64,000 bases of DNA from Octopus sinensis (Eukaryota), in the NCBI RefSeq assembly GCF_006345805.1, contig NC_043000.1:20646001-20710000 (forward strand), given 5' to 3'. The notes below the pieces were generated by a model. It made no database searches. It saw only the letters and a list, made by a program, of their open reading frames with translations, and was not told the DNA's origin. Both the position numbers and the translations under genes were made by a program. Below, in pieces: positions 2,659-61,051 of this stretch. Each line of letters opens with the position of its first letter. Positions within the stretch are counted from its first letter, which is position 1.

Positions 2659-3385
2659 AAGCCTAGATGAATCAAAACGAAAACACCTCATACAATGACA
2701 GTGTAAATCACTTCTGCTACAGGCCTCAAAAATAAAAACTATTACAATTCATGAACCAATTTAATAATTAAACCAAATTTTAGTCATAATTCCGTCTATG
2801 TCATATGGGATTTATATACACCAGCACTTTATTTTCTAACCCGTCACTGAGAGAAAAGCTAGGTTGCCCACTGTGAGATTTGAACTCAGAACGTAAAGGA
2901 TTCAACAAGTTTGTCCAATATCCTCATGATACCGTTAATTCGTCACTTAGCTTTGATCGTTCTTTCTGTTTTCCTTTTCCCCAAGTTTTAACTATTTTCT
3001 GGTGATATCGTATGATTTTAGATTGTGTTCTTCCAGTCACATTCGATCGTTACTCTCAGTATATTTTATTGCTGTGGGAATGTCATTCAGAAATATTCCG
3101 TAATGAAAAATATAAAAACGCGTTCCTTTTTTGATTTGGTTCAGATCTTTGAGGATTTAGTGATAACTGGAAGTCATGTAGACAATAGATTATTTTATTC
3201 AAACGGAAATAAAGATATTCGAATGGAGCTCACGCATAAACATCTGCTATAGAACTTATCACAAACCATTGTGTGAGTTTATCTATGGTCGTTGACCTGC
3301 TGAAATAGCAGGTCTTGCTATCGTTTCCTACAAAACACATCCTAACGTCTTAAAAATTGAAGGACACATTAAATAGTGTAGTTCT

Positions 3386-3777
3386 GTGGAGGCGCAATGG
3401 CCCAGTGGTTAGGGCAGCGGACTCGCGGTCGTAGGATCGCGGTTTCGATTCCCAGACCGGGCGTTGTGAGTGTTTATTGAGCGAAAACACCTAAAGCTCC
3501 ACGACGCTCCGGCAGGGGATGGTGGTGATCCCTGCTGTACTCTTTCACCACAACTTTCTCTCACTCTTACTTCCTGTTTCTGTTGTACCTGCATTTCAAA
3601 GGGCTGGCCTTGTCACTCTCTGTGTCACGCTGAATATCCCCGAGAACTAAGTTAAGGGTACACGTGTCTGTGGAGTGCTCAGCCACTTACACGTTAATTT
3701 CACGAGCAGGCTGTTCCGTTGATTCGGATCAACCGGAACCCCCGTCGTCGTAACCGACGGAGTGCTTCCATCCATCC
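3386..3777 (+). mobile_element. tRNA-derived SINE, family A
   Basis: A box TGGCCCAGTGG, B box GGTTTCGATTCC, 11-bp TSD AGTGTAGTTCT. Confidence 0.9.
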
Positions 3778-4425: not shown

Positions 4426-5289
4426 GGATCTTTTCCTTTTGAACGGCACTTTGTAACATAATTTCTAGGTAACTAAAAAGTTTTAAACTTCGTATTCTGG
4501 TAGAATGTGTTTATAAAACATCATTTTTCTTGGCTTTATTGAGTAAATTCTATATGTTGTAAGATATTTCGTCTTTAATTTTGAGCATTTCGGCAATTTT
4601 AACCAATCGCTGACCTCCATTTAGGTAAATAACATTCTGTGCATAATGAATATGTCCCCCCTTTAAGAAACAGATTGGGTTTATTTACATTTGTGAAGAA
4701 AAAAAGATACCCTTCCCCTACCCCTAACCCTAACTAACCCTAACTCTAATCCTAAATCTAAAATAGATTGAAATGCAATACTAGGGTTATAATTATGTGT
4801 GACAATTTCATACGACACCGCTACGGAAATGGGATTTTTTTCTAGCGGTGTCAAATGAAAATGTCACCCATAATTATGGCCCTACTATCGATCTATTGCA
4901 TTTCAATCTATTTTAGATTTAGGGTCAGAGTTAGGGTTAGGGCTAGGGTTAGGGGTTGCATTTCAATCTCTTTTAGATTTAGGGTTAGGGGTGGGGGGAA
5001 GGGTATCTTTTTTTTCTTCACAAATGTAAATAAACCCAATCTGTTTCTTAAAGGAGGGACATATTCATTATGCACAGAATGTTATTTACCTAAATGGAGG
5101 TCAGCGATTGGTTAAAATTGCCGGAATGCTCGAAATTAAAGACGAAATATTTTACAACCTATAGAATTTTCTCAATAAAGCCAAGAGAAAATGATGTTTT
5201 ATAAACACATTCTACCAGTATACGAAGTTTAAAACTTTTTAATTACCTAGAAATTATGTTACAAAGTGCCGTTCAAAAGGAAAAGATCC
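4426..5289. mobile_element. Foldback MITE with 8-bp TSD (ATTGATTA) and internal (TTAGGG)-like tracts
   Basis: TIR GGATCTTTTCCTTTTGAACGGCAC at both ends. The whole element is palindromic around about 4835. TSD at 4418-4425 and 5290-5297. Confidence 0.85.
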
Positions 5290-6477: not shown

Positions 6478-6915
6478 TTAGCACGCCGGGCGAAATGTGT
6501 AGCTTTATTTCGTCTGCCGTTACGTTCTGAGTTCAAATTCCGCCGAGGTCGACTTTGCCTTTCATCCTTTCGGGGTCGATTAAATAAATACCTATTTCTT
6601 TATTACCCACAAGGGGCTAAACACAGAGCGGACAAACAAGGACAGACATAGGTATTAAGTCGATTACATCGACCCCAGTGCGTAACTGGTACTTAATTTA
6701 TCGACTCCGAAAGGATGAAAGGCAAAGTCGACCTCGGCGGAATTTGAACTCACAACGTAACGCAGACGAAATACCGCTAAGCATTTCGCCCGGCGTGCTA
6801 ACGTTTCTGCCAGCTCGCATACCAGTTATGCACTGTAATCGACTTAATCCGTCTGTCTGTCCTTGTTTGTACCCTCTGTGTTTAGCCCCTTGTGGGTAGT
6901 AAAGAAATAGGTATT
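6478..6915. mobile_element. SINE family C, one copy nested in another in opposite orientation
   Basis: Consensus GGCGGCGAGCTGGCAGAAACGTTAGC...GAGTTCAAATTCC...CCCCTTGTGGGTAGTAAAGAAATA. Other approximate copies: 672-795, 13820-14830, 21770-21980, 26572-26950, 31490-31700, 34625-34856(-), 36106-36340(+), 45602-45845(+), 48735-48963(-), 51988-52150(+), 59245-59755(-), 60472-60888(+). Confidence 0.85.
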
Positions 6916-8838: not shown

Positions 8839-9095
8839 TATATATTAGAAGAAATAAGGTACTCAGAAATCTGGATGGTTTTATATTTACAGATATTTAT
8901 TAATATGTCACATGTTTTTATAAATCATATATCACCGCTTGCGTCCACTCTAGTGGAGTTTTCAGTTTCTGAAGACTCCACTAGAGTGGACGCAAGCGTT
9001 AATATATGATTTATAAAAACTTGTGACATATCAATAAATATCTGTACTTATAAAACCATTCAGATTTCTGAGTACCTTATTTCTTCTAATATATA
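8839..9095. repeat. Foldback palindrome (arms about 127 bp, 3-nt loop at 8966-8968)
   Basis: tatattagaagaaataaggtactcagaaat...gagttttcag | ttt | ctgaagactcc...atttctgagtaccttatttcttctaatata. Confidence 0.9.
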
Positions 9096-13904: not shown

Positions 13905-14866
13905 GATATTTGTCGAGATAACTTTCAAAAGTGAATTGTTAATGGTTTCAAATTTTGCCAGAAGGGCAGACATTTTGGGGGATGGGATAAGTCGATTACT
14001 TCGACCCCAGTGTTTCACTGGTACTTAATTTATCGACCCCGAAAGGATGAAAGACAAAGTTGACCGCAGCGGAATTTGAACTCAGATTGTAGCGACAGAC
14101 GAAATACCTATTTCTATTATTTTACTACCCATAAGGGGCTAAACACAGAGAGGACAAACAAGGACAGACAAACGGATTAAGTCGATTATATCGACTCCAG
14201 TGCGTAACTGGTACTTATTTAATCGACCCCGAAAGGATGAAAGGCAAAGTCGACCTCGGCGGAATTTGAACTCAGAACGTAGCGGCAGACGAAATACCGC
14301 TAAGCGGTTCGCCCGGCGCGCTAACGTTTCTGCCAGCTTACCGCCTTATGCAACCAAGTATTTTAAGAGCATTATAAACCATTATTGTGCCCCGCCTATG
14401 TTAGCAGTATTATTAATTCGCTTTGGAATGTGGAGAGCTGGCAGAATCGTTAGAGCACTGGACGAAATGCTTAGCGGTATTTCATCTGTCTACGTTCTGA
14501 GTTCAAATTCCGCCGAGGTCGACTTTACCTTTCATCCTTTCGGGGTCGATTAAATAAGTACCAGTTACGCACTGGGTCGATATAATCGACTTAATCCGTT
14601 TGTCTGTCCTTGTTTGTCCTCTCTGTGTTTAGCCCCTTATGTGTAGTAAAGAAATAGAAATAGGTATTTCGTCTGTTGCTACATTCTGAGTTCAAATTCC
14701 GCCGAGATCAACCTTGCCTTTCATCCTTTCGGAGTCAATAAATTAAGTACCAGTGAAACACTGGGGTCGAAGTAACCAACTTATCCCATCCCCCAAAATG
14801 TCTGCCCTTATGGCAAAATTTGAAACCATTATCAATTCACTTTTGAAAGTTATCTCGACAAATATC
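13905..14866. repeat. About 960-bp inverted duplication of nested SINE-C copies plus unique flank
   Basis: Arms 13905-14338 and 14436-14866 share the same nested junctions and the non-SINE end gatatttgtcgagataactttcaaaagtgaattg. Confidence 0.85.
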
Positions 14867-17559: not shown

Positions 17560-17672
17560 TCTCTTAGATACCCTAAATTATAATTTTAATTATAATTATT
17601 ACTTTGAAGGTTTTTATTCCCATGTTAGCCACCTTTATAGATCAGTATTTAAATAAAGATCTTATCCTTACC

Positions 17673-17703
<31 letters not shown>

Positions 17704-18245
17704 ATATATATACTATATATTCAAAAAGCAATAAGATTCAAGTTAATTTAAATGAATTTACTTGAATATGGTACCTAACTTAGATGCACCAAAAAAAACT
17801 ATACTGTTTTAACAATACAGTAATGGGGGTGATTATAAGCGAGAAAGAAGCAACAAGAATGGATAGGTATTAGTACAATCGTTTCATACAAGGAAGGCTT
17901 TATTAAAAGTTGCAAAAATTACAGCATATAAACGTGTCCCGTACTCATCAGCTAAAATACATGTGAGTTCTCTAGACATCCTAGTGGTTGAGGCTATACT
18001 CATGAAGTAATGTAGATAATTAAGTAACATAAACAGATTTCCAAAGTTCATTAAAGTTCTTTAAAGATGATGTACAGTCTTATCACAGAATTTTAAAAAA
18101 GTTTCAATAGCATCACAGAGAAGGTGACCTAATCCATAGTGCACATATGAATTTCCAGAGATATGATGAGGGATTACATACTCACAGAAGACAAATTTAT
18201 CCATGTTAATCACAACGAGGTGGGTCTCAATTCCTGCTTATTAGC
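17560..18245 (-). mobile_element. Probable Penelope-like terminal (pLTR) fragment carrying the 17867 hammerhead
   Basis: Hammerhead core preceded by a weak endonuclease-end-like stretch (ELRPT). Boundaries approximate. Confidence 0.4.
17867..17960 (-). ncRNA. Type I hammerhead ribozyme motif (Penelope-associated type)
   Basis: Minus strand: GTATTTTAG-CTGATGA-GTACGGG...CCTTGTAT-GAAAC-GATT-GTA-CTAATAC. Core complete. Stem I CTAA/TTAG + TAC/GTA, 7-bp stem II with wobbles, 2-bp stem III, GUA triplet. Confidence 0.7.
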
Positions 18246-18560
18246 ATTATATATATATTATATATATATAATATATATATATATATATGTATGTGTGTGT
18301 TTGTGTGTAGGTATATATATGTATGTATGTAGGTATGTATGTATGTTTATATATTATATTATATAATAATATATATATATATATATTATATAGGCGCAGG
18401 AGTAGCTGTGTGGTAAGTAGCTTGCTTATCAACCACATGCTTCCAGATTCAGTCCCACTGCGTGGACACCTTGGGCAAGTGTCTTCTATTAAGCCTCGGG
18501 CCGACCAAAGCCTTGTGAGTGGATTTGGTAGACGGAACGGAAACTGGAAGAAAGCCGTCG

Positions 18561-22044: not shown

Positions 22045-22075
22045 TCCTGTCTTATATATATATATATATAATATA

Positions 22076-22107
<32 letters not shown>

Positions 22108-22199
22108 TCATATATATATATATATATTCATATATATATTATTCTATATATATTCATATTATATATATATAGATATATATATTCATATATATATATATA

Positions 22200-22237
<38 letters not shown>

Positions 22238-22348
22238 TATATATATATTCATATATATATATTATTATATATTATATATATATATATATATATAACATAT
22301 ATACATACATACATACATATATATGTATATATATATACATATATATAC
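22045..22348. repeat. (TA)n microsatellite
   Basis: Visible directly. Confidence 0.95.
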
Positions 22349-24246
22349 GATGGGCTTCTTACAGTTTCCATCTACCATATCCACTCACAAGGCTTTGGTT
22401 GGCCCGAGGCTATAGTAGAAGACACTTACCCAAGGTGCCATGCAGTGGGACTGACCCAGAACCATGTGGTTGGGAAGCAAGCTTCTTATCACACAGCCAC
22501 GCCTGCGCCTGTAGAATTCTAACTGCCAGCTCATCTCCTGTGACAACTTGATAAATTTGAAATAATTTTATTCAATACATTTTTCCTGAATACCTTTCGA
22601 TAATTTTGTTTTGACGTTCTTCATTATCACTTTTAATTATAATTTCGAGAATTTATAATTGTCATTTTCTTTTTTTATTATGATAAAAATTTATGTTAAA
22701 TATTTCAATATTTCATTTATCTTTTCTTTCCAACAAATTTAATCAATTTTCTTTATTATTTAATTACAATTCTAAATGGTTTCGTTTTATCTGGAAATAT
22801 ATTTGATTGTCCACAATTAACATTTTAATTAGTCTTTAAGCAGAATCATTTAGAATGACAGACAAAATGCCTTGCAGTGTTTAGTTACATACAACTACTT
22901 GATTCTGAGTTCAAATGCCACTAATGTTGACCTTGCGTTTCGTTTTTCCTCTGGTCTACGACATTCAGTCTTTTTAGCTTTCTTTCAATCAAAACCTTTC
23001 CATTCTTCGTAGTCCTTTATGCTACAGTGGCCTCAAGCCTTGTTTGGGACAGAATCGTATCAAAAATCGTTTGATACGATACAGAACCAGTCAAGTACTG
23101 GCTCTGATTTTAAGTGATTACACTTTGCTTCAAAATTAATGGCCTTGCGCTAATGTTAGAATTCAATACATTAATCTGTTTTTTATATTTGTTTTAACCA
23201 ATAGGCTGTGGCCATGCTGGGGGACTGCTTGAAGAATTTTTGTTTAATTGAATGAATTGACCCCATTATTTTTTGTTTATTAAGCCTGGTACTTATTCTA
23301 TCAGTTACTTTTGCTGAACCACTAAGTTGCGGGGGATGTAAACACACCAACACCGGTTGCTAAGCAGTGACGGGAGACAAACACACACACACACACACAC
23401 ACACCCTCACATATATATAGAGAGAGAATGGAGTTTTTTTCAGTTTCCATTTACCAAACCCACTCACAAGGCTTTAGCTGGCCTGAGGCTACAGTAGAAG
23501 GCAGCTTGTCCAAGGTGTCACACAGTGGGACCGAACTTGGAACCATGTGGTTGGGAAGCAAACTTCTTACCACACAGTCATGCCTGCACCCATTAATATG
23601 TATTTAAATCTGAAGTTGATTTGAAGTCTATCTGAATATGATATTCCATCATGGTGACATCACGGTGGCTAAAAGAAACTAAAGAACTATTAATGAATTA
23701 ATAATTTATCAAATTCCCTAAACCAGTGTGTAGGGGTCGGGTTTTTTTTTGGCTTCGCTCAATAGTTTATTAACACTTGGGAGACAACAGCGTTGGTCTA
23801 TCAGCCGAAAAGTCAAATGACAAAGAAGATTATATTAGTTCATTCAATTTCCTACAAGAATATATGTAGCTTTATATATGTAAAGTAATTACTTTGTTTT
23901 TTTACAATTTTTGTTTTGAAAAATGGGTGCGTACTTTTTGTAGTGCTTGTGAAAAGGGTTCTGCCTTCTTGGCACTGAAACTCCAAATGAGGCTCCAACT
24001 CCAAAGGGTTAAAATGGCTAAAATGTGATTTTAGATACTCTTTTAATTGTTTCTGTCATTTGACTGCAGCCATGCTGGAGCACTGCCTTTAGTCGAGCAA
24101 ATCGACCCCAGGACTTATTCTTTGTAAGCCTGGTACTTATTCTGCCAGTCACTTTTTGCTGAACCACTAAGTTACGGGGATGTAAATACACCAGCATTGC
24201 TTGTCAGGCGATGGTGGGCGGGACAAACACAGACATACAAACATAT

Positions 24247-24353
<107 letters not shown>

Positions 24354-24361
24354 TATTTTAT

Positions 24362-24492
24362 TTTATTTTATAGAAGGAGCTTCTACAGGACTAGAACTGT
24401 TTCATTCAAATGAAATCAACAGGAAGCCTTCCTGATGATTTCATTTGAATGAAACAGTTCTAGTCCTGTAGAAGCTCCTTCTATAAAATAAA
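24362..24492. repeat. Near-perfect palindrome (57-bp perfect arms plus an inner CAGGAA/TTCCTG stem)
   Basis: 24362-24418 is the exact reverse complement of 24436-24492. Confidence 0.95.
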
Positions 24493-25739
24493 TTAATTTA
24501 CTCTGCTATGTATTGAGTACCTTATTTACTGTGGTTAACCCCGACTCAACCCGAGACCTACATATATATATATATATATATATACATATATACATATATA
24601 CGCCGGGCTTCTTTCAGTTTCCATCTACTAAATCTACTCACAACGCTTTGGTCGGCCTGAGGCTATAGTGGAAGACACTTGCCCAAGGTGCCACACGGTG
24701 GGACTGAACCTGGAACCATGTGGTTGATAAGCTAGCTACTTACCACACAGCCACTTCTGTGCCTTTGCTTTGGCACAATGATAGAAACATGTATGGCTTT
24801 GATTGGTACAGGCATAGCCGTGAGTTTAAGAAGTTTGCTTCCCAACCACATAGCATCAGGTTCAATTCCACTGTATGGTAATTTGGATAAGTGTCTTCCA
24901 TTATAGCCCTGGGCCAACCAAAACCTTGTGAATGGATTTGGTATATGAACACTGTGTATTTCAGTTAAATATATTATCCTAGTAGTTCTCAGCCATTTTT
25001 TGCCTATGAACCACTCAGACTCTTATTTTACTCTATTGGACCTTCATAGCCATTCAATGTTCTTATTATATTTTTATAATTAAATATTATTAGGAATTAT
25101 ATAAAAAAAATTGTTAGAATATTTCGTGAATTGTAGAAGTATAACCAATTTATTGCCGGCATGGCTGTGTGGTAAGAAGCTTGCTTTTCAACCACTTGGT
25201 TCTGGGTTCAGTTCCACTGCATGTCACCTTGGGCAATTGTCTTCTACTATAGCCTCAGGTCGACCAAAGCCTTGTGAGTGGATTTGGTAGACGGAAATTG
25301 AATGAAGTCCATCGTACATGTGTGTGTGTGTGTGTGTTTGTGTTTGTGCGTCTGAGTTTGTCCCCACCAGCATCGCTTAAAAACCGATGTTGGTGTGTTT
25401 CATCCCTGTAACCTAGTGGTTCGGTAAAAGAGACTGATAGAATAAGTACCCAGCTTACAAAGAATAAGTCCTAGAGTCGATTTGTTCGACTAAAGGCAGT
25501 GCTCCAGCATGGCTGCAGTCAAATAATGGAAACAAATAAAAGAAAAAAAAGAAAAGAAATTTTAAGGGGTAGGAGTGGCTGTGTGGTAAGTAGCCTGCTT
25601 ACGAACCACATGGTTCAGTCCTACTGCGTGGCAATTTGGGTAAGCGTCTTTTACTATAGCCTCGGGCTGATCAAAGCCTGGTGAGTGGATTTGGTAGACA
25701 GAAACTGAAAGAAGCCTGTCGTATATATGTATATATGTG

Positions 25740-25952: not shown

Positions 25953-28885
25953 ATATGTTTGTGTGTCTGTGTTTGTACCCCCAATATTGCTTGGCAACTG
26001 ATGCTGGTGTGTTTATGTCTCCGTAAACTAGTGGTTCAGCAAAAGAGACCGATAGAATAAGTACTAGGCTTACAAAGAATAAGATTTGGGGTTAATTTTC
26101 TCGACTAAAGGCGGTGCTCCAGCATGACCACAGTCAAATGACTGAAACAAGTAAAACAGTAAAAGAGTAACAAAATCTTTAAAGCCTTCCCATCCTTCAG
26201 AGTCTTGTAGATCCCATTTAAGAATTACTCTGGTATCCAAATTTGCACAATCGTGTAAAAACAGTATTCCATCTACTTTATTATTTCTCAATATAATGGA
26301 CGTATTCCCCTAAGCATTGAAGATTAAAATACATGATCCTAGTCTCTAAGAATATAGAGATTGTCTAAGGAAGATTTGGCTCTGTATTAACAACTAAAAT
26401 ACTATAAGCATTGATGGAATTACATCATTTAAATATTTGGCGATATAAAACTCTCTGCTGGCTCTAATGCTGCCTGTAAAGTAGTTTTGGTCATGTCAGT
26501 GCATCAGAGAATGGAGTCTACAGCACGTCACTAAAAGTAAGGAAAAAATCTCGTTATTAATATAAAGATAATAGAAGGCGGCAAGCTGGAAGGATTGTTA
26601 GCACACCAGACAAAATGCTTGGCACCATTTTGTCTGTTTTTACATTCTGAGTTCAAATTCTACTGAAGGTGACATTGCCGTTCTTCCTCTCAGGGTTGAT
26701 GAGATAAGTACCTATTTCTTTACTACCCGCAAGGGGCCAAACACAGAGAGGACAAACAAGGACAGACAAATGGATTAAGTCGATTACATCGACCCCCAGT
26801 GCGTAACTGGTACTTATTTGATCGACCCCGAAAGGATGAAAGGTAAAGTCGACCTCAGTGAAAGTTGAGCACTGGGGTCAATGTAACTGACTTACTCAAC
26901 TCCCCCCCCCACCGAATTTTCTGACCTTGTGCCAAAATTTGAAACCAATATAAAACTAAGGATTCAAACTAAATGTTGATTAGAATATCGAATATTGAGT
27001 TATTAGAATATCTAAATATTAGAATACCTGATATTAAGATATATCAGAAAGAGTTTGATATTACATTTTTTTACCTGTTTCAGTCATTTGACTGTGACCA
27101 TGCTGGAGCACCGCCTTTAGTCGAATAAATCGAATCCAGGACTTATTCTTTATAAGCCTAGTATTTATTCTATCTCTCCCTTTTGCCGAACATTAGTAGT
27201 CAAGTGATGGTAGAGGGACAAACACAGACTCACAAACATATACACACATACATATACCAAAATTGAACCAACCCTATGACTGGCACCCGGCAGTTGCCAG
27301 TGCCACTGGACTGACTCCTGTGCAGGTGGCAAATAAAGAAACACCATTTCGACCCTGTGCTTGAGGAGACCTATTGAGTCAAGTACATCAACATCAAAAA
27401 TCAATGGAAATTGTAGTTGTGATCCCTGTGCCAATGGCACGTAAAAAGCACCCACTACACTCACAGAGTGGTTGGCATTAGGAAGGGCATCCAGCTGTAG
27501 AAACACTGCCAGATCAGACTGGAGCTTGGTGCAGCCTTCAGGCTTCCCAGACCCCGGTCGAACCGTCCAACCCATGCTAGCATGGAAAACAGATGTTAAA
27601 CGATGATGATGATGATGATATATATATATAATTAATATATACGATGGGCTTCTTTCAGTTTCCATCAATCAAATCTACTCACAAGGCTTTGGTCAGCCCG
27701 AGGCTATAGCAGAAGACACTTGCCCAAGGTGCCATGCAGTGGGACTGAACCCGGAACCGTATGGTCGGTAAGTAAGCTACTTACCACACAGCTATGCCTG
27801 CGTTTATGCTTATTTCTGTTTAGAAGTTAAATTAAGAGTTGGCATTGTCAGAAAATCCCAATCTGCAGTTAGAACCATTAAAAGGTAAAAGACTATTAAT
27901 TTATTTTTTTTTAACATAGGTCAGTCATGGCTGTATTGTCAAAATGTTTGCTTTGCAACCCTGTAGGTTCAGGTTCAGTTCCTCTGTATACCACTTTGGG
28001 CCAAATGTCTCCTACTATTGCCCTGGACTAACCAATGTCTTGCGAGTGAATTTGGTTGATAGGAACTGTGTGGGAATCCATCAGGACCTGAGAGACCTGC
28101 ATGGGGTTGATGTAGGTGTCTTCAAAATAAAGCTGGACCTCTTCCTGTTAGGTGTCCCAGATGAACCAACTTCGCGGCAGGAGATGCAGATGAGGGCAGT
28201 TGCATCAAACTCTCTCATGCACCAAATGTCAATTGCTAAAATGTATGCATGAAGTAAAATTATGTAGCAACACCAAATGGCAGTGCCCCAGCATGGCCAC
28301 AGCTCGTGAGCTGAAACTAGATGAAAAAAAATATTTTTTTTAATATATGTATGTATGTATGTACATATTGCTTGTGTGTGTGCATGTGCGTGCATATGCA
28401 TGTGTGTGTGTGTGTGTGTTTGTCCCCATCCCCAACATGACAATCATTGTTGGTTTGTTCATGTCTTCATAACCTAATTTTTTTTGGCAAAAGTGGCCAA
28501 TAGAACAAATACCAGTCTTCAAAAAATAATAAATAAATAAAGTACTGGGGTGGATTTGTTTGACTGAACCCTTCCAGGCATTGGCTCCATATGACCACAG
28601 TCCATTGATTGAAACAAATAAAAGAATAAAAAAAATGAAGGAATAAAAGAATAAAAGAATCAAAAGAATTCATTCATTGCAAATTACCAAACATTGCAAA
28701 ACTTTGTTGAGTTCTTTAGAATGTATGAAGAGAGAAATAGTTGATTCCAATCCTTTTATAACCAATGCTTAACCAAGGAGCATTTATAAATAAACATCTT
28801 TTTCCTGTTTTACTAAAGGTTTTTTACGTTTATATATTTGTTTTGCAAGATTCTTGATGTGAAATCATGTGTTGAAACAGATATT

Positions 28886-29204
28886 GTTGTATTTAGGGAT
28901 GGTCATGTTGCCAGTTTAGCCAATAAAAACACACACACTATATATTTGGTGTTCACTTGCTTCAGCTTTATTTATTTTTTACATTAATCTTAATCTTATT
29001 TCGGCCAGAGTTCTTTCGAGACACACAAATAAGAAAGAAGAAAGCAAAATACCACTGATGAGGTCACAGAAGTGTGACGAAACAGCTCTGGCCGAAATAA
29101 GATTAATGTAAAAAATAAATAAAACTGAAGCAAATTAACACCAAATATATAGTGCAAGTGTTTTTATTGGCTAAACTGGCAACATGACCATTCCTAAATA
29201 CAAC
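28886..29204. repeat. Inverted repeat (arms 28886-29010 and 29086-29204) of a Penelope-like terminal sequence
   Basis: Arms are reverse complements apart from a few mismatches and indels. The 75-nt spacer holds most of the hammerhead core. Confidence 0.85.
29052..29091 (+). ncRNA. Minimal type I hammerhead ribozyme motif in the loop of a foldback
   Basis: CCA-CTGATGA-G-GTCACA-GAAG-TGTGAC-GAAA-CAGC-TC-TGG. 3-bp stem I, perfect 6-bp stem II (one extra G), single A:U pair as stem III, UC cleavage site. Confidence 0.55.
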
Positions 29205-29263
29205 TAAATGTTTTATCGTAGTTTTAAACCTGAAGTATTCCCTGTTCTTTTGTATTTCCACAG

Positions 29264-29276
29264 GTGTCTGAAAACA
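29264..29276 (+). other. RELN: 13-nt 5' UTR portion of the first coding exon (implies an upstream non-coding exon)
   Basis: Polypyrimidine tract and CAG acceptor (cctgttcttttgtatttccacag|gtgtctgaaaaca ATG) directly upstream of the start codon. Confidence 0.6.
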
Positions 29277-29493
29277 ATGCATTCTAAGAAGAAAAGCAAC
29301 CTATACATCTCACTGCTAGTTCTGCTGTGTTCAGCCAGCTGCTCATTGGCTTTCCCTCACATTCAACCATTTTTCTTCCTATGTAACATAAACGGACTAA
29401 GTAAAGACGTGGGTATAGACAAAGGAGAGATTTCTTTGAGTGTATCAATCAAAGGAAACCCAGAATATTATGAACCGGGTCATATATATGAGA
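29277..29493 (+). CDS. RELN: Reelin ortholog, coding exon 1 (signal peptide + start of reeler domain)
   Basis: MHSKKKSNLYISLLVLLCSASCSLAFPHIQPFFFLC...GEISLSVSIKGNPEYYEPGHIYE matches remembered vertebrate reelin (PRFSPFFFLC...[23 protein letters not shown]). Acceptor ttccacag ends 29263, ATG at 29277, phase-1 donor A|GTAAGT at 29494. Confidence 0.95.
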
Positions 29494-30489
29494 GTAAGTA
29501 GAACATTTAACTTAACCCTTTTATTACTGTATTTATTTTGAGATGCTCTGTGTTTCTTTCAATTAATTTTAAATATAATAAAGAATTTAGTAAAATAACT
29601 TAGTTATCATTAACCCATTCATGCTGATCATCTGTTTAAAGTGACACTTAATTTATAAGGTTATTAATCGAATACATGATAGAAATTGTGATTTGTGTAT
29701 GATCTGTATCAAAGAATGAAATATGTTCTTAATGCATATGCAGTCTGTATCAAATGGATTTCAATGAAATATTTTTCAGTTGTTATTTAGGTGTTATTTA
29801 GGTGGCTGTGTGGTAGGAAGCTTGCTTTCTAACCACATGGTTCTGGGTTCAGTTCTGCTGCATGGTACCTTGAGCAAGTGTCTTCTACTATAGCTTTGGG
29901 CTGACCAAAGCCTTGTAAATAGATTTGGTAGGCAGTAACTGAGAGAAGGCCATCCTATGTGTGTGTGTATATATATATATATGAAACACCATCCGAGCGT
30001 GGCCGTCTGCCAGCTTCGTCTGGCACCTGTGTCGGTGGCACATAAAATCACCCACTACACTCTCGGAGTGGTTGGCGTTAGGAAGGGCATCCAGCTGTAG
30101 AAACACTGCCAGATCTGACTGGCCTGGTGCAGCCTTCGGGCTTGCCAGACCCCAGTTGAACCGTCCAACCCATGCTAGCATGGAAAGCGGACGTTAAACA
30201 ATGATGATGATGATGATGATGATATATATATATTTATGTGTGTGTGTCTATGTTTGTGTTTGTCCCCCCACCATCGCTTCACAACCGATGCTGGTGTGTT
30301 TACGTCCCCATAACTTAGCGGTTCAGCAGAAGGGACTGATAGAATAAGCACCAGGCTTACAAAGAATAAGTCCAGGGTTCGATTTCTTCGACTAAACGGT
30401 GGTGCTTCAGCATGGCCACTGTCAATTGACTGAAGCAAGTAAAAGAATAAAAGAACTGTATGATAGAAATATAACCAATTTATTGCAGA

Positions 30490-35351: not shown

Positions 35352-35923
35352 TACGAGGGTGAGTCAAAAAGTAATGTCATTTTGTTTCGGACAGGTATAA
35401 TTACCAACAAAAGAACATGTATCATACATCAAAATGAAGCTGGTCCTCTGTGGATCACATCCCTACTGCTCAACATAGTCACTGTTTCTCTCAATAGCAA
35501 TGTTCCACCTTCGAATGAGAGCATGTATCCCTGCCTCGTAAAATTCTGTTGACGGTTCTTTGAACCACTTCTTCACTACAGTTTTCACTTCCTAGTCACT
35601 GGAATAATTTAACACCTTCAGACTATCATCTCTTCAGCCCCATGAAAAATGGTCTGTGAGCCAAACATTATTCCAGTGACGCAGAATTGAAAACTGTAGT
35701 GAAGAAGTGACTCAAAGAACAGTCAACAGAATTTTACAGGGTAGGGATACATGCTCTCATTCGAAGGTGGAACATTGCTATTGAGAGAAATAGTGACCAT
35801 ATTGAGAAGTGGGGATGTGATCCACGGAGGTACAGCTTCATTTTGATGTATGATACATATTCCTTTGTTGGAAATTATACCTGTCCTAAACAAAATGGCA
35901 GTACTTTTTGACTCACCCTCGTA
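35352..35923. mobile_element. Palindromic mariner derivative with TA TSD, inserted in a SINE-B copy
   Basis: TA-CGAGGGTGAGTCAAAAAGT...ACTTTTTGACTCACCCTCG-TA. Both arms carry the transposase C-terminus (FYRVGIHALIRRWNIAIERN). Confidence 0.85.
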
Positions 35924-37405: not shown

Positions 37406-38312
37406 CTTGATAGTTGGATACACATGTGTTTCTATTTCTCCATATTTCCTTCTCCGTTCTTTTCTCTCCTTGGCTATCTTATCTTTCAGAAGAAAAGTGA
37501 ATTCTTGAAATGCAGGAGACATTTTATTCTTTTTTACCTTTTCCCTGAATGTCAGTCTAATATCATCTGTTCTTTTTTTCTTTTACTTCATCTTTGTGTT
37601 GTATTTTCTTGTTGTTATGTGGACACCCCCAGACGATGAAGTAGGCTAGTCCAATACCTAGATATAGAGGGAGATGGAGAAGTCTAGAAGTCGAGTTGTT
37701 GAGTAGAGGTCATCCAAACATGCAACATAACAGTGGCAACGAGGATTTTGTAGCTCACACAGTCACTGTGTAGTATTGCAATATAACATCTGTACTATAT
37801 ACATGTGTGTGTGTGCATGTATGTATACCTTGAAAGTTGAAAGCCTTATAAAGGCTCCCTCTGTGTTAATCAGTTTGGAAAAATTAACATCTAGCATTGT
37901 GATTAGACCACAATTTGGTCAAATAGAGGTCTTCCTGTCACCCAAAAGAACCTGATGAGGGTTGCTGAACCAATAGTAAATCAGTCCAGATACTGTTTGA
38001 GCTTGGTACCAATCATAATAATTCTCCCTTAGAGGTTATACTTGTAGCAATGAGCTCAGATGTCTCTACAAATTTGCCTAATCAGTGCTGTGGCTAGAAT
38101 ATGTGATACCTAGAATAGCCCTTAAGTTTGTCACTGCCTACACAGTTTTACAGCAAACCCAAAAGTACTGCCCCCAGAAAGTGTTACTCAGGGTAGACTG
38201 CCCTTATCACCTTCCACCTAGCTATGATAATTTCGTTATGTCTTTATTAATTAAATTTAATTTTCTAATGCATAATAATTTTTTCTTTTGTTTTCTTCTT
38301 TTCTTTTGCAAG

Positions 38313-38544
38313 TCACCATTCAATCCAGTAACACATTTGATAATTTTCTACTGACTGGCCTCTACTCATTATCGGAGGATGTACGTAAAAAGATTCTTTA
38401 TATGCCAGTAGCCCCTGGCTTACCTGTTCAAGGTGAAAGTTTCATGTGTTCCACAATTTATTCACATTCCAATAATACCCCAGAATACCAGTTGCAGTTT
38501 CAGTGGATTGCACCTCCATCTGGAACAGGATGCGTCAATTTTCG
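38313..38544 (+). CDS. RELN: Reelin ortholog, coding exon 2 (reeler domain core)
   Basis: Polypyrimidine tract + gcaag acceptor. Phase 1 in, giving (I)TIQSSNTFDNFLLTGLYS...FMCSTIYSH...LQFQWIAPPSGTGCVNF(R) versus reelin VTISTSTFFDGLLVTGLYT...FMCSVVASH...LSFIWIAPPAGTGCVNFM. Phase-2 donor CG|GTATGT. 232 nt. Confidence 0.95.
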
Positions 38545-58513: not shown

Positions 58514-58931
58514 GTAAGATTTCACTTATATTTCACTCCGTCGTCATCATCGTTGCAGTTGTCATCATCATCATCATCATCCTCATCATCATCACCACCA
58601 TCATAATCCTCACCATCATCATCATCATCATCATCAACAACACCGTGTTACCCTGTCACATGCAGAGCACCAAGCGACTGAAGAGGGATGAAGCGTATTT
58701 GATTGTATTCTTTTATTTGTTTATTTGTTTCAGGCCATTGACTGCGGCGGCCATGCTGGAGCACCGCCTTTCAGTCGAAGAAATCGAACCCGTGACTTTA
58801 TTCTTTGTAAGCCTGGTATTTCTTCGATCGGTCACTTTTACCGAACCGCTAAGTTACGGGGACGTAAACACACTAACATCGGTTGTCAAACGATGGTTGG
58901 GGTACAAACACAGACACAAAGATTCACACAC

Positions 58932-58982
<51 letters not shown>

Positions 58983-60044
58983 TAAGCGCAAGAGTGGCTG
59001 TGTGGTAAGTAGCTTGCTTACCAACCACATGGTTCCGCGTTCAGTCCCACTGCGTGGTACCTTGGGCAAGTGTCTTCTACTATAACCTCGGACCGGCCAG
59101 AGTTTTGTGAGTGGATTTGGTAGACAAAAACTTAAAGAAGCCTGTTGTATATGTGTGTGTGTTTGTCCCCACCATCATCTTTTGACAACCGATGTTGGAG
59201 TGTTTACATCCACATAACTTAGCGGTTCGGGAAAAGAGAACGTTAAGATAGACGAACTGCTGCTAAGCATTTCACCCGACGTGCTGACGTTTCTAGCAGC
59301 TCGCCGCCTAAGAAAATATATATATTCGTTTCTACTTTAGGCACAAGGGCCGAAATTTTGGGGGAGGGGCAAGTCGATTAGACCGACCCCAGTACGCAAC
59401 TTGTACTTAATTTATTGACCCCGAAAGGATGAAAGGCAAAGTCGATCTCGGCAGAATTTGAACTCGGAACGTTAAGACAGACGAAATACTGCTAAGCATT
59501 TCGCCCGGCGTGCTAACGTTTCTTATTTCTTTATTGCCCACAAGAGGCTAAACATAGAGGGGACAAACAAGGAGAGACAAAAGGATTAAGTCGATTACAT
59601 CGACCCCAGTGCGCAACTGGTACTTAATTCATCGACCCCGAAATGATGAAAGGCAAAGTCGACCTCGGCGGAATTTGAACTCAGAACGTAACAGCAGACG
59701 AAATGCCTATTCCTTTACTACCCACAAGGGTCTAAACATAGAGGGGACAAACAAGTTTTAACCTCAACTATAACACATAGGCTGGAATAGATCTCCAATT
59801 TGTAAGCCTGAATTGTCTGACACGCCGATAGGCGGGGAGAGGAGAGGACTATATAATTTATCTTTTTATCATTTGTTTCAGTCGGACGGCGGCCATGCTG
59901 GGGCACCGCCTTCTGGAATTTTAGTCGAACGAATCGACCCTTTTCTGTTTTGTTTAAAAACCTCGTACTTATTCTATTAGTCTTTGTTGGCGAGCCGTTT
60001 GGTTACTTGGATGTAAGCACCAACACCGGTGACAAACACACACG

Positions 60045-60079
<35 letters not shown>

Positions 60080-61051
60080 GACGGGCTTCTTTCAATTTCC
60101 GTCTACCAATTGAGTAAGTACGAGACTCTAAGAAAAAAAAACAGTCTCCGGGGTCGAATCGTTCGACTAAAACCGTTCAAGTTGGTGCCGCCCCAGCATG
60201 GCCGCAGTTTAATAACTGAAACAAATGAAAGATGAAGGAAAAGGGGAAAAGATGGCTGAATAAAATATACTACAGTTAAATTAAGCCAATTGGAAAATTC
60301 ATTATCTATTGATTTAACTTCCAGTCAAGACAGCACGGAGACGGATATTAAAAAGATAATAAAATTGATAAACTTCAAATGGTAACAAAACTGAAGAACG
60401 AACATCAGTTAAAAGTTTAAATAAATGTATTACTAGCTGACCCCGAGTCGTCCAAAATGACGGTTAATTGTAGGCGAAGAGCTGGTAGAAACGTTAGCAC
60501 GTCGGGCGAAATGCTTAGCGGTATTTCGTCTGCCGTTACGTTGTGAGTTCAAATTCCGCCGAGGTCGACTTTACCTTTCATCCTTCCGGGGTCGATAAAT
60601 TAAGTACCAGTTACGCACTGGGGTCGATGTAATCGACTTAATACCTATGTCTGTCCTTGTTTGTCCCCTCTGTGTTTAGCCCCTTGTGGGTAATAAAGAA
60701 ATAGGTATTTCGTCTGCCGTTACGTTGTGAGTTCAAATTCCGCCGAGGTCGACTTTATCTTCCATCCTTTCGGGGTCGATAAATTAAGTACCAGATGCGC
60801 ACTGGGTCGATATAATCGACTTAATACCTATGTCTGTCCTTGTTTGTCCCTTCTGTGTTTAGCCCCTTGTGGGTAATAAAGAAATAGGTTAATTGTAGTA
60901 TTTTATATATAAGTAAGGTGCAAACCAAGTTTTTAGTTTAATAATTATTTTATTACCAAATTTTTTGTGAAAAATCTATCTGCAATTAACATACCTTGAC
61001 TATTTGTTTCCTTCAAAAGAATTTTAAAGTTTTCCTTCCTTCTTGTACGAC

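What the first reader, a model, noticed from the sequence alone, without database searches (positions are those of the whole stretch)
28886..29204. Sense-strand hammerhead inside a long hairpin just before the first coding exon of reelin
Seen: CCA-CTGATGA-G-GTCACA-GAAG-TGTGAC-GAAA-CAGC-TC-TGG at 29052-29091, predicted to cut after C29088, about 175 nt before the 29263 acceptor. Its 3' part (CTCTGG, 29086-29091) is also the start of the right arm and can pair with the left arm (CCAGAG), so ribozyme fold and long hairpin are mutually exclusive. The left arm read on the minus strand ends in a sibling half-core (GAAA-GAAC-TC-TGG). The right arm stops at 29204, next to a branch-point-like ACTAAAT. 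Inference: this could tune reelin pre-mRNA splicing or cleavage, or be edited. Weak points: stem I is only 3 bp, stem III is a single pair with a non-palindromic loop, and there is an extra G after A9.
Basis: partly seen in the sequence, partly recalled or inferred. Interest (0 to 1): 0.7.

Follow-up and report, generated by a model that had tools for sequence, protein, structure and literature searches.

The report
Hammerhead-ribozyme relic inside retroelement hairpin
The 319-base hairpin just upstream of a reelin-like coding exon is most likely the scar of one jumping-gene insertion that carried its own small self-cutting RNA motif, now probably inactive, and not a device that regulates the gene.

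Summary
The inverted repeat has arms 28886-29024 and 29072-29204 and folds at -184 kcal/mol (z -25.6). The hammerhead-like string sits at 29052-29091.

A motif of this quality is expected fewer than 0.001 times per 64 kb by chance, and it lies exactly at the junction of the two arms.

A related genome (ENA contig, homologous exon) has a multicopy family with the same layout: a textbook minimal hammerhead at the centre of a hairpin made of one direct copy and one inverted, 5'-truncated copy. The junction differs from copy to copy, and five of six complexes are flanked by an 8-14-bp target-site duplication. That is the signature of one retroelement insertion per hairpin.

The window copy is defective:
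- Its helix III segment (ACAGCU) is not palindromic.
- No partner hammerhead lies within the 64 kb.
- No target-site duplication is recognisable.
- The ribozyme fold costs +22 kcal/mol against the hairpin.
- The mismatches between the arms look neutral.

I read it as a retroelement relic, probably catalytically silent. A role in reelin splicing is unsupported. No further copies of this family could be reached, so its origin is inferred by analogy.

The parts
28886..29024 (-). Copy B. This is the inverted, 5'-truncated copy of the element and forms the left arm. Read on the minus strand it starts inside the hammerhead (GTGTCTC-GAAA-GAAC-TC-TGG...) and runs to the element's 3' end at 28886.
   Evidence: Arm alignment of 139 vs 133 nt with 11 substitutions and a 6-nt indel at 28984-28989.
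29005..29024 (-). The 'sibling half-core'. It is copy B's version of the helix II 3' strand, GAAA, loop 3, UC and UGG. It differs from copy A at 4 of 20 positions.
29025..29051 (+). A/G-rich 27 nt upstream of the hammerhead (ACAAATAAGAAAGAAGAAAGCAAAATA). It is unique to the direct copy A and forms part of the unpaired centre.
   Evidence: Not part of the inverted repeat. Unpaired or weakly paired in the MFE structure.
29052..29091 (+). Minimal type I hammerhead-like motif.
- Helix I: 29052-54 / 29089-91.
- Core CUGAUGA: 29055-61.
- Unpaired G: 29062.
- Helix II: 29063-68 / 29073-78, with G10.1-C11.1.
- Loop 2 GAAG: 29069-72.
- GAAA: 29079-82.
- Loop 3 CAGC: 29083-86.
- U16.1 and C17: 29087-88.
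- Predicted cleavage after 29088.
   Evidence: Sequence. Descriptor hit, and the only clean one in the window. Chance expectation. Architecture matches the published PLE min-HHRs except for helix III.
29072..29204 (+). Right arm, which is the 3' part of the direct copy A. The inferred 3' end of the element at 29204 lies 116 nt after the predicted cleavage site.
   Evidence: Comparable 3' ends lie 74 or about 120 nt after the cleavage site in the related-genome family.
29262..29263 (+). AG of the predicted 3' splice site, preceded by a pyrimidine tract. It lies 58 nt downstream of the hairpin.
   Evidence: Sequence only. Not verified with transcripts.
29264..29493 (+). First coding exon of a reeler-domain (reelin-like) protein. 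The ATG is at 29277 and the donor GTAAGT at 29494.
   Evidence: Homologous exons in L001 and L002.

Best explanation
The hairpin is the footprint of one insertion of a short, hammerhead-bearing, non-autonomous retroelement of the Penelope-like-element / retrozyme kind.

Two cDNA copies of the element's 3'-terminal part were joined head to head. The direct copy A (+ strand, about 29025-29204) keeps 27 nt of upstream sequence plus the whole minimal hammerhead. The inverted copy B (minus strand, 29024 down to 28886) is 5'-truncated inside the hammerhead, at the start of the helix II 3' strand. The two outer ends, 28886 and 29204, are the elements' 3' ends, 116 nt beyond the cleavage site.

The hammerhead belonged to the element's own life cycle. 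It processed multimeric or tandem element transcripts, normally as a dimer through a palindromic helix III.

In its present place it is most likely silent, for five reasons:
- Helix III is one pair with a non-palindromic loop.
- Helix I is 3 bp.
- No second hammerhead is available.
- In a sense transcript the left arm, transcribed first, captures the cleavage site and the helix I 3' strand.
- The hairpin is 22 kcal/mol more stable than the ribozyme fold.

What remains for the host is a 130-bp intronic dsRNA 58 nt upstream of a splice acceptor. That is one of many such inverted repeats in this region.

Shown here: the repeat anatomy, the motif, the energetics, the neutral pattern of arm mismatches, and the same architecture with target-site duplications in a related genome.
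Inferred: that this copy arose the same way, and that it no longer cleaves.
For: 1. Motif features. All conserved core positions are present (C3-A9, G12-A14, A15.1/U16.1, C17). So are the G10.1-C11.1 pair, the unpaired nucleotide between A9 and G10.1, a 6-bp helix II and a short helix I. These are the features listed for PLE min-HHRs in PMC4209133.

2. Chance. Expected hits per 64 kb are 0.035 for the relaxed pattern, 0.006 with helix II >=6, and 0 in 1500 shuffles with G10.1-C11.1 added. The hit falls within about 50 nt of the junction of an inverted repeat.

3. Published precedent.
- PLE insertions often carry an inverted 5'-truncated copy, forming an inverted repeat (bioRxiv 2021.04.23.441226).
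- Dual min-HHRs on opposite strands 100-700 bp apart, and mostly single truncated motifs, are reported (PMC4209133).

4. Independent analogue.
- L001 minus strand 3349-3313 holds a textbook min-HHR at the centre of a 95-nt-arm hairpin. Its 5' half is in the unique centre and its 3' half starts the right arm.
- The family is multicopy, with 81 ORF hits.
- Junctions differ from copy to copy.
- Five of six complexes are flanked by 8-14-bp TSDs.
- Element 3' ends lie 74 or about 120 nt after the cleavage site, against 116 nt here.

5. Descriptor specificity. In 123.5 kb of that genome it hits only repeated hammerhead families, 8 motifs in 3 families, where about 0.07 hits are expected from the window-composition shuffle rate.

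6. Neutral decay. Only 2 of the 11 arm mismatches are G.U-compatible.

7. Energetics. Hairpin -181 kcal/mol against -158.8 with the hammerhead enforced.

8. Background. Cephalopod genomes are reported to hold Penelope elements and Rfam hammerhead hits (PMC6962438).
Against: - No other copy of this particular element could be found. The window has none, the 123 kb of related-genome loci have none, two metagenome scans found nothing, and the ORF-based protein searches found nothing. The family, its consensus and any covariation are therefore unknown.
- No target-site duplication is recognisable.
- The helix III segment is non-palindromic in both arms (ACAGCU and AGAACU). A parsimonious ancestor of the two is non-palindromic as well. 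All three hammerhead families in the related genome are palindromic there.
- No PLE-type RT or GIY-YIG ORF is seen in the window. The RTs near the analogue loci look LINE-like, with RVT_1 and zf-RVT.
- Rfam does not call a hammerhead here. The same is true of the textbook control, so this carries little weight.
- The window has many other long inverted repeats without hammerheads, so inverted duplication is not specific to hammerhead elements.
Confidence: 0.6

Rival explanations
1. The hammerhead-like string is a chance match. It sits inside a foldback element, MITE or local inverted duplication that has nothing to do with ribozyme-bearing retroelements.
For: - The window is rich in long inverted repeats of other origins, at least 13, including one made of mariner-like transposase fragments.
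- The element has no TSD and no detectable relatives.
- Helix III fails the palindrome criterion, and helix I is only 3 bp.
- Rfam scores it at 13.4 bits against a gathering score of 48.5.
- Genome-wide, a relaxed pattern with 0.035 hits per 64 kb would yield many chance matches.
Against: - A motif of this quality (helix II >=6 with G10.1-C11.1) occurred 0 times in 1500 shuffled windows.
- It carries the class-specific unpaired nucleotide after A9.
- It sits exactly at the junction, with the inverted copy truncated inside it, as in the confirmed family of the related genome.
- Rfam also misses the textbook control.
Confidence: 0.25
2. One reading: a functional sense-strand intronic ribozyme/hairpin switch that modulates cleavage or splicing of the reelin-like pre-mRNA, possibly controlled by A-to-I editing of the hairpin.
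For: - It is in sense orientation, 175 nt upstream of the acceptor of the first coding exon.
- The complete catalytic core is present.
- Helix II can form co-transcriptionally and persists even in the hairpin MFE.
- Conserved intronic hammerheads exist in amniotes, cited within PMC7229834.
Against: - The ribozyme fold is disfavoured by 22 kcal/mol once the hairpin can form.
- In isolation the core CUG pairs with CAG.
- Hammerheads with 1-bp helix III are poorly active as monomers and need a palindromic partner (PMC4209133, PMC7229834). No partner lies in the 64 kb.
- The arm mismatches look neutral.
- The homologous locus in the related genome has no alignable intron sequence and no hairpin at this position.
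Confidence: 0.07
3. Whatever its origin, the hairpin is used as a long-dsRNA substrate: for ADAR editing, as an endo-siRNA or miRNA-like precursor, or as a structural element that shortens the effective branch-point-to-acceptor distance.
For: - About 130 bp of nearly perfect duplex, z -25.6, lies 58 nt from a splice acceptor.
- Generic similarity to long plant miRNA hairpin models.
Against: - All the miRNA hits are far below gathering scores.
- Many equivalent hairpins occur nearby.
- No conservation data are available.
- The mismatches are not pairing-preserving.
Confidence: 0.08

Closest known systems
Minimal type I hammerheads of Penelope-like elements (min-HHRs; Cervera & de la Pena 2014, PMC4209133; Lunse, Weinberg & Breaker 2016/17, not readable here)
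   Same: - Complete core and G10.1-C11.1 pair.
- Unpaired nucleotide between A9 and G10.1.
- Long helix II (6 bp) and short helix I (3 bp; 2-5 bp reported).
- Helix III reduced to the A15.1-U16.1 pair.
- Mostly found as single, truncated copies, or as pairs on opposite strands.
   Different: - Positions 15.2-16.2 and loop 3 are not palindromic (ACAGCU), so the dimer that defines how this class cleaves cannot form.
- No family, no covariation and no PLE ORF could be shown for this copy.
Inverted-repeat insertion structure of PLEs (an inverted 5'-truncated copy next to the direct copy; Craig et al. 2021, bioRxiv 2021.04.23.441226 / PMC8557442)
   Same: Head-to-head direct and inverted copies that share the element's 3' end, with one copy 5'-truncated.
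   Different: Here both copies are very short (180 and 139 nt). There is no ORF, no pLTR tandem and no recognisable TSD or 'tail'.
Hammerhead-in-hairpin family of the related genome
   Same: - Same geometry: the 5' half of the hammerhead in the unique centre, the 3' half starting the right arm, and the inverted copy truncated in or near the hammerhead.
- 3' ends lie 74 or about 120 nt after the cleavage site.
- Short helix I and an unpaired base after A9.
   Different: - No sequence similarity outside the core.
- That family has a palindromic ACGU helix III, 8-14-bp TSDs and tandem 449-nt units, all of which are lacking or unseen for the window copy.
Metazoan retrozymes and amphibian satellite 2 hammerheads (Cervera & de la Pena 2020, PMC7229834)
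   Same: - A type I hammerhead in a short, AT-rich, non-coding repeat.
- Helix III of a single pair capped by a tetraloop, as in axolotl HHR_Amex1, which is weakly active as a monomer.
   Different: - Retrozymes are tandem repeats, each unit with a hammerhead that has loop 1/loop 2 tertiary contacts and a palindromic loop 3.
- Here there is one copy, no closed helix I loop, and a non-palindromic loop.
Conserved intronic hammerheads of amniotes (Rfam Hammerhead_HH9 RF02275 and HH10 RF02277)
   Same: Sense-strand hammerhead inside an intron of a protein-coding gene.
   Different: Those are stable canonical ribozymes that are ultraconserved across species. This one matches no Rfam hammerhead model, has minimal helices and shows no evidence of conservation.

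Membership tests
Hammerhead ribozyme (any type) | Conserved catalytic core: C3 U4 G5 A6 N7 G8 A9, G12 A13 A14, the A15.1-U16.1 pair, and H17 (not G) | tested here: met
   CUGAUGA at 29055-61, GAAA at 29079-82, U29087 and C29088. Descriptor hit.
Hammerhead ribozyme (any type) | Reaches the gathering score of an Rfam hammerhead covariance model | tested here: not met
   No hit at gathering. The best is Hammerhead_3 at 13.4 bits against 48.5, E = 9. Control: the textbook min-HHR in L003 is not found at all at E <= 10, so this test has no power for minimal variants.
Hammerhead ribozyme (any type) | Site-specific self-cleavage after H17 | not testable with these tools
   Needs in vitro transcription or RNA end mapping.
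PLE-type minimal hammerhead (min-HHR) | G10.1-C11.1 pair and an unpaired nucleotide between A9 and G10.1 | tested here: met
   G29062 is unpaired and G29063 pairs with C29078. The criterion is taken from PMC4209133.
PLE-type minimal hammerhead (min-HHR) | Enlarged helix II (6-8 bp) with a short helix I (2-5 bp) | tested here: met
   Helix II is 6 bp and helix I is 3 bp, not extendable.
PLE-type minimal hammerhead (min-HHR) | Palindromic positions 15.2-16.2 and loop 3, which allow an intermolecular helix III in a dimer | tested here: not met
   A15.1-CAGC-U16.1 is not self-complementary. Copy B has AGAACU. The three families in the related genome have ACGU, ACAGUCUGU and ACGUUAUAAUGU.
PLE-type minimal hammerhead (min-HHR) | A second hammerhead in tandem or within about 50 kb | tested here: not met
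   No other clean hit in 64 kb. Only the truncated sibling on the other strand and a weak long-loop candidate at 17951-17874.
PLE-type minimal hammerhead (min-HHR) | Belongs to a consensus family of many copies with covariation in the helices | not testable with these tools
   The source genome is not in any reachable collection.
Penelope-like element insertion | Inverted 5'-truncated copy adjoining a direct copy | tested here: met
   Arms 28886-29024 and 29072-29204 share the outer (3') ends. The left copy is truncated at 29024.
Penelope-like element insertion | Target-site duplication flanking the whole complex | tested here: not met
   No direct repeat of 7 nt or more at the two ends under my mismatch limits. 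Five of six analogue complexes have 8-14-bp TSDs.
Penelope-like element insertion | Association with a PLE ORF (RT plus GIY-YIG) or a pLTR tandem | tested here: not met
   No Pfam RT or GIY-YIG domain in the nine ORFs of 151-344 aa that I scanned, out of 29 ORFs of >=110 aa in the window. This is expected for a 5'-truncated or non-autonomous copy, so it is weakly informative.
MITE / foldback DNA transposon | Fixed-length TSD (TA, TTAA, 8 bp...) and multiple copies with the same termini | tested here: not met
   No TSD and only a single copy in the window. Genome-wide copy number is not testable.
microRNA precursor families (Rfam MIR4208, MIR837 and others) | Reaches the family's gathering score | tested here: not met
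   53.9 against 140 bits and 43.9 against 117 bits. This is the generic long AT-rich hairpin effect.

The most novel reading that the evidence does not exclude
The hammerhead is still weakly active, and the inverted partner acts as a built-in safety catch. In the nascent reelin-like pre-mRNA, the balance between the fast-forming local ribozyme fold and the slower, far more stable 130-bp hairpin would set how much transcript is severed upstream of the first coding exon. That balance might be shifted by ADAR editing or helicases. This would be a cephalopod counterpart of the amniote intronic hammerheads, built from a retroelement scar.
Probability: 0.05. Interest if true: 0.7.

Novelty: new member of a known kind. 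Interest (0 to 1): 0.3.

Why it matters
It matters in three ways.

**For the finding.** It turns an apparently odd, flawed ribozyme into a recognisable object: the extra base after A9, the tiny helix I and the near-absent helix III are the signature of retroelement minimal hammerheads. The long hairpin is explained as the mechanical by-product of the insertion (a direct copy plus an inverted truncated copy), not as an evolved switch.

**For annotation.** Rfam models miss this whole class, including textbook members. Cephalopod-like genomes may therefore hold many unannotated hammerheads, each embedded in a long dsRNA-forming hairpin. That is relevant to anyone mapping ADAR substrates or small-RNA sources in these heavily RNA-editing animals.

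**If the copy were still active.** A sense-strand self-cleaving RNA 175 nt before the first coding exon of a neurodevelopmental gene would be of real interest, but the evidence points the other way.

A side result: in one copy of the related family, the inverted cDNA starts at the exact nucleotide after the predicted cleavage site. This is genomic evidence that these minimal hammerheads do cut in vivo.

Tried and rejected
- **Rfam.** The scan of the window at gathering thresholds and the permissive scan of 28800-29300 gave no usable hammerhead call. The control shows Rfam is blind to this class, so I set the negative aside.
- **Exact look-ups of window ORFs.** The ORFs around the exon are not on record, so the source genome is not in the collection.
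- **Protein-level search with the arm's open frame.** The 41-aa alignment found no candidate.
- **Full HMMER scan with the 63-aa frame across the centre.** The only hit is an unrelated tandem-repeat protein.
- **Two metagenome DNA scans.** The arm 21-mer and the gapped hammerhead pattern both found nothing.
- **BLAST against loci of the related genome.** The element against 123 kb, and a global alignment of the post-cleavage tails, gave no similarity (z = 0.2).
- **Orthologous-intron comparison.** Only the two exons align between the window and L001, so presence or absence at the orthologous site cannot be judged.
- **TSD search.** Nothing found.
- **Alternative registers.** I checked a longer helix III (CAG/CUG) and an extended helix I by hand. 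Neither gives a U16.1 or a helix I.
- **Truncation in loop 2 as a rule.** I considered that the inverted copy is always truncated in loop 2 because of helix II. The other complexes are truncated at unit positions 84, 87, 105, 115, 121 and 164, and my sample is biased by the query, so I rejected it as a rule.
- **PLE ORF association.** The RTs near the analogue loci are RVT_1 with zf-RVT, which looks LINE-like, so the autonomous partner remains unknown.
- **tRNA-like stretches in the analogue unit.** ARAGORN finds no tRNA.
- **Identifying the organisms.** A literature search for ERZ21867824, GCA_052370215.1 and SRR31792455 found no paper.
Full report
**1. What is in the sequence**

An inverted repeat has a left arm at 28886-29024 and a right arm at 29072-29204, around a 47-nt unique centre at 29025-29071. 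The arms align over 139 vs 133 nt with 11 substitutions and one 6-nt indel (TTAATC, 28984-28989).

As RNA, the region folds into one long hairpin of -184.1 kcal/mol, against -59 +/- 4.9 for shuffles (z = -25.65). The element is single-copy within the window.

The string CCA-CUGAUGA-G-GUCACA-GAAG-UGUGAC-GAAA-CAGC-UC-UGG lies at 29052-29091.

The arm homology does not begin at CTCTGG. It begins at 29072, so the complete 3' half of the motif is part of the right arm, and only the 5' half is in the unique centre. The 'sibling half-core' on the minus strand of the left arm (GTGTCTC-GAAA-GAAC-TC-TGG) is simply the other arm's copy of that 3' half. It differs from copy A at 4 of 20 positions.

**2. 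The gene context**

Downstream there is a pyrimidine tract and an AG at 29262-29263. The ATG is at 29277 and a GTAAGT donor at 29494.

The conceptual product of this exon plus the next conserved exon (about 38.3 kb) matches the Pfam Reeler domain at 27.5 bits, against a cut-off of 21. The best solved relative is the reeler domain of F-spondin. The PFFFLC...GNPEYYEPG...GTGCVNF pattern fits reelin from my memory.

Homologous first exons exist in an ENA contig (L001, 73% identity over 86% of the query) and in a Logan contig (L002). Only the exons align; the introns do not. The organism could not be verified.

**3. Is the motif more than chance?**

No Rfam family reaches its gathering score anywhere in the 64 kb. 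A permissive scan gives only Hammerhead_3 at 13.4 bits against 48.5 (E = 9), plus generic plant-miRNA hairpin matches far below threshold.

I then wrote a descriptor: CUGANGA, 0-1 extra nt, helix II >=4 bp, GAAA, U16.1-H17 within 13 nt, helix I >=3 bp. The window gives one clean hit, this one. Dinucleotide shuffles of the window give these expectations per 64 kb on both strands:

| Descriptor | Expected hits per 64 kb |
|---|---|
| Relaxed | 0.035 |
| Helix II >=6 | 0.006 |
| Helix II >=6 and G10.1-C11.1 | 0 in 1500 shuffles |

The window holds at least 13 long inverted repeats. Among the nine I inspected, only this one has a hammerhead core plus a downstream GAAA at its centre. A coincidence of motif and junction is therefore improbable, though not impossible on a genome-wide scale.

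**4. The 'weak points' are mostly class hallmarks**

Cervera & de la Pena 2014 (PMC4209133) describe the minimal hammerheads of Penelope-like elements (PLEs) with these features:
- a long helix II (6-8 bp);
- a short helix I (4-5 bp, and 2 bp in D. virilis);
- a highly conserved G10.1-C11.1 pair;
- helix III reduced to the core pair, with palindromic 15.2-16.2 and loop 3.

They act poorly, and as dimers. They occur mostly as single truncated copies, or as pairs on opposite strands 100-700 bp apart. Craig et al. 2021 add that PLE insertions often have an inverted 5'-truncated copy next to the direct copy, which forms an inverted repeat.

The window motif meets every criterion except the palindrome. 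A15.1-CAGC-U16.1 cannot pair with itself, nor can copy B's AGAACU. The most parsimonious common ancestor of the two arms is not palindromic either.

**5. An independent analogue in a related genome**

The same descriptor, run on L001, found on the minus strand at 3349-3313 the string UCAC-CUGAAGA-A-GGCCAGA-GGUGAAA-UUUGGCC-GAAA-CG-UA-GUGA. This is a textbook min-HHR with a palindromic ACGU.

It too sits at the centre of a long hairpin: arms 3235-3329 and 3364-3458, 96% complementary, -142 kcal/mol, z -19. Its 5' half is in the unique centre and its 3' half starts the right arm, which is the window's layout.

A protein-level search with the open frame through that hairpin returned 81 ORFs. Nearly all come from the same ENA assembly, and two from an NCBI assembly. 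Their translations share the hammerhead and right arm (NHLKKARGEIWPKRSE...) but differ in what precedes them.

I fetched six genomic copies and mapped them onto a 449-nt unit defined by a tandem in L004. The hammerhead is at unit positions 81-125, and cleavage falls after position 121. Each locus consists of an inverted copy and a direct copy:
- The inverted copies are truncated at unit positions 84, 87, 105, 115, 121 or 164.
- The direct copies start at positions -4/1, 56, 56, 72, 93 or 190.
- 3' ends are at about 195 or about 240, which is 74 or about 120 nt after the cleavage site.
- Five of the six complexes are flanked by a TSD of 8, 9, 12, 13 or 14 bp. The sixth lies in a (TA)n tract.

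So each hairpin is made afresh by one insertion event.

In L004 the inverted copy begins with GTGAAAGAAG, the very first nucleotides after the predicted cleavage site. This is what a full-length cDNA of a self-cleaved RNA would look like.

The sample is biased, because my query contained the left arm.

The loci contain two more hammerhead families, each with a palindromic helix III: ACAGUCUGU (tandem, 324 nt apart, next to (TA)n in L005) and ACGUUAUAAUGU in L007. In 123.5 kb the descriptor hit only such repeated families, 8 motifs, where about 0.07 hits would be expected.

Rfam does not detect the textbook motif in L003 even at E <= 10. The Rfam negative for the window is therefore uninformative.

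**6. What the window copy most likely is and does**

By anatomy, it is a head-to-head pair of 5'-truncated copies of a hammerhead-bearing non-autonomous retroelement. Copy A (29025-29204) holds the whole motif. Copy B (29024 to 28886, minus strand) is truncated 17 nt upstream of the cleavage site. Both end 116 nt after it.

The arm mismatches look like neutral decay. Only 2 of 11 (28898/29192 and 29011/29085) would keep a G.U pair.

For the sense transcript, forcing the hammerhead pairs costs +22.2 kcal/mol (-158.8 against -181.0). The isolated 54-mer prefers to pair the core CUG with CAG.

The motif has a 1-bp helix III with a non-palindromic loop, a 3-bp helix I, and no partner hammerhead within 64 kb. 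I therefore expect no cleavage, or only trace cleavage. For comparison, the axolotl monomer with a 1-bp helix III and a palindromic tetraloop cleaves 6% in one hour (PMC7229834).

**7. What weakens this reading**

- I could not find a single further copy of this element, because the source genome is not in the reachable collections.
- There is no recognisable TSD.
- No PLE ORF is in the window. The reverse transcriptases near the analogue loci look LINE-like.
- The retroelement origin is therefore inferred from architecture and analogy, with confidence of about 0.6. The main rival, at about 0.25, is a chance motif in an inverted duplication of another kind.

**8. Verdict**

It is a new, probably decayed, example of a known kind, with modest interest. 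The useful by-products are:
- the recognition that these cephalopod-like genomes carry hammerhead-in-hairpin insertions that Rfam misses;
- one genomic trace of in vivo self-cleavage in the related family.

Noticed in passing
window 13905-14866, 35352-35923, 4524-5190, 8839-9095, 59371-60886, 24039-25738, 6587-6915, 22053-22307: The 64-kb window holds at least 13 long inverted repeats with arms of 80-290 nt, usually 84-99% complementary (one is 73%). They include a near-perfect palindrome with a 3-nt spacer at 8839-9095. Long dsRNA-forming hairpins are therefore common around this gene.
   Followed up: partly
window 35352-35923: This hairpin has 257-nt arms and a 58-nt spacer. Its centre translates to ...PSDYHLFSPMKNGL..., which I recognise from memory as the C-terminal region of a mariner-type transposase. 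It appears to be an inverted duplication of a DNA-transposon fragment, with no hammerhead.
   Followed up: no
window 17951-17874 (minus strand): A weaker hammerhead-like hit: UUAG-CUGAUGA-helix II of 7 bp (three of them G.U, and G.U at 10.1-11.1) with a 44-nt loop-GAAA-CGAUUG-UA-CUAA. Its helix III segment ACGAUUGU is quasi-palindromic. It lies in a roughly 530-nt block bounded by (TA)n tracts at 17668-17713 and 18248-18392, a setting like that of the hammerhead elements in L005.
   Followed up: partly
window 59182-59244 (+): A descriptor hit of the U3-A8 core variant with a long loop 2, next to direct and inverted repeats at 58829-59755. It is probably chance.
   Followed up: no
L004 10001-10738 (also L001 3235-3504, L005 9894-10358, L006 10023-10308, L007 10097-10412, L008 9973-10190, L003): A multicopy hammerhead-bearing element of a related genome, with at least 81 ORF hits. 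It has a 449-nt unit that occurs in partial tandem, with hammerheads 449 nt apart in L004. Each insertion carries an inverted 5'-truncated partner, and five of six are flanked by an 8-14-bp TSD. Rfam does not detect the hammerhead.
   Followed up: yes
L004 10073-10094: The inverted copy begins exactly at the first nucleotide after the predicted hammerhead cleavage site (GTGAAAGAAG...). This is what a full-length cDNA of a self-cleaved RNA would give. In five of six complexes the inverted copy's truncation point falls within the hammerhead (unit positions 81-125), but the sample is biased by my query.
   Followed up: partly
L005 9166-9265 and 9490-9589: A second hammerhead family: CCACA-CUGAAGA-GUUCU-GAU-AGAAC-GAAA-CAGUCUG-UC-UGUGG, with a palindromic helix III ACAG-U-CUGU. 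Two copies lie 324 nt apart and abut a long (TA)n microsatellite. The upstream copy has U16.1 changed to A.
   Followed up: partly
L007 2432-2469: A third hammerhead family: AAGUC-CUGAUGA-U-GGUUU-AUUA-AAACC-GAAA-CGUUAUAAUG-UC-GACUU. It has an unpaired U after A9 and a 12-nt palindromic helix III.
   Followed up: no
L004 10418-10515; L003 361-434: tRNA-like stretches (GGGCCCGTGGTGCAGCGGATAGAG...GGTTTCAAATCC and GACATTGGCCTAGCGGTTAGAG...GGGTTCAGTCCCAGG) lie inside or next to the 449-nt hammerhead unit. This hints at a SINE-like head. ARAGORN calls no tRNA there.
   Followed up: partly
window 29277-29493 and about 38310-38540: The N-terminal reeler domain matches F-spondin best among solved structures. 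No solved reelin N-terminal chain came up, so the gene name 'reelin' is not proven by the tools used here.
   Followed up: partly
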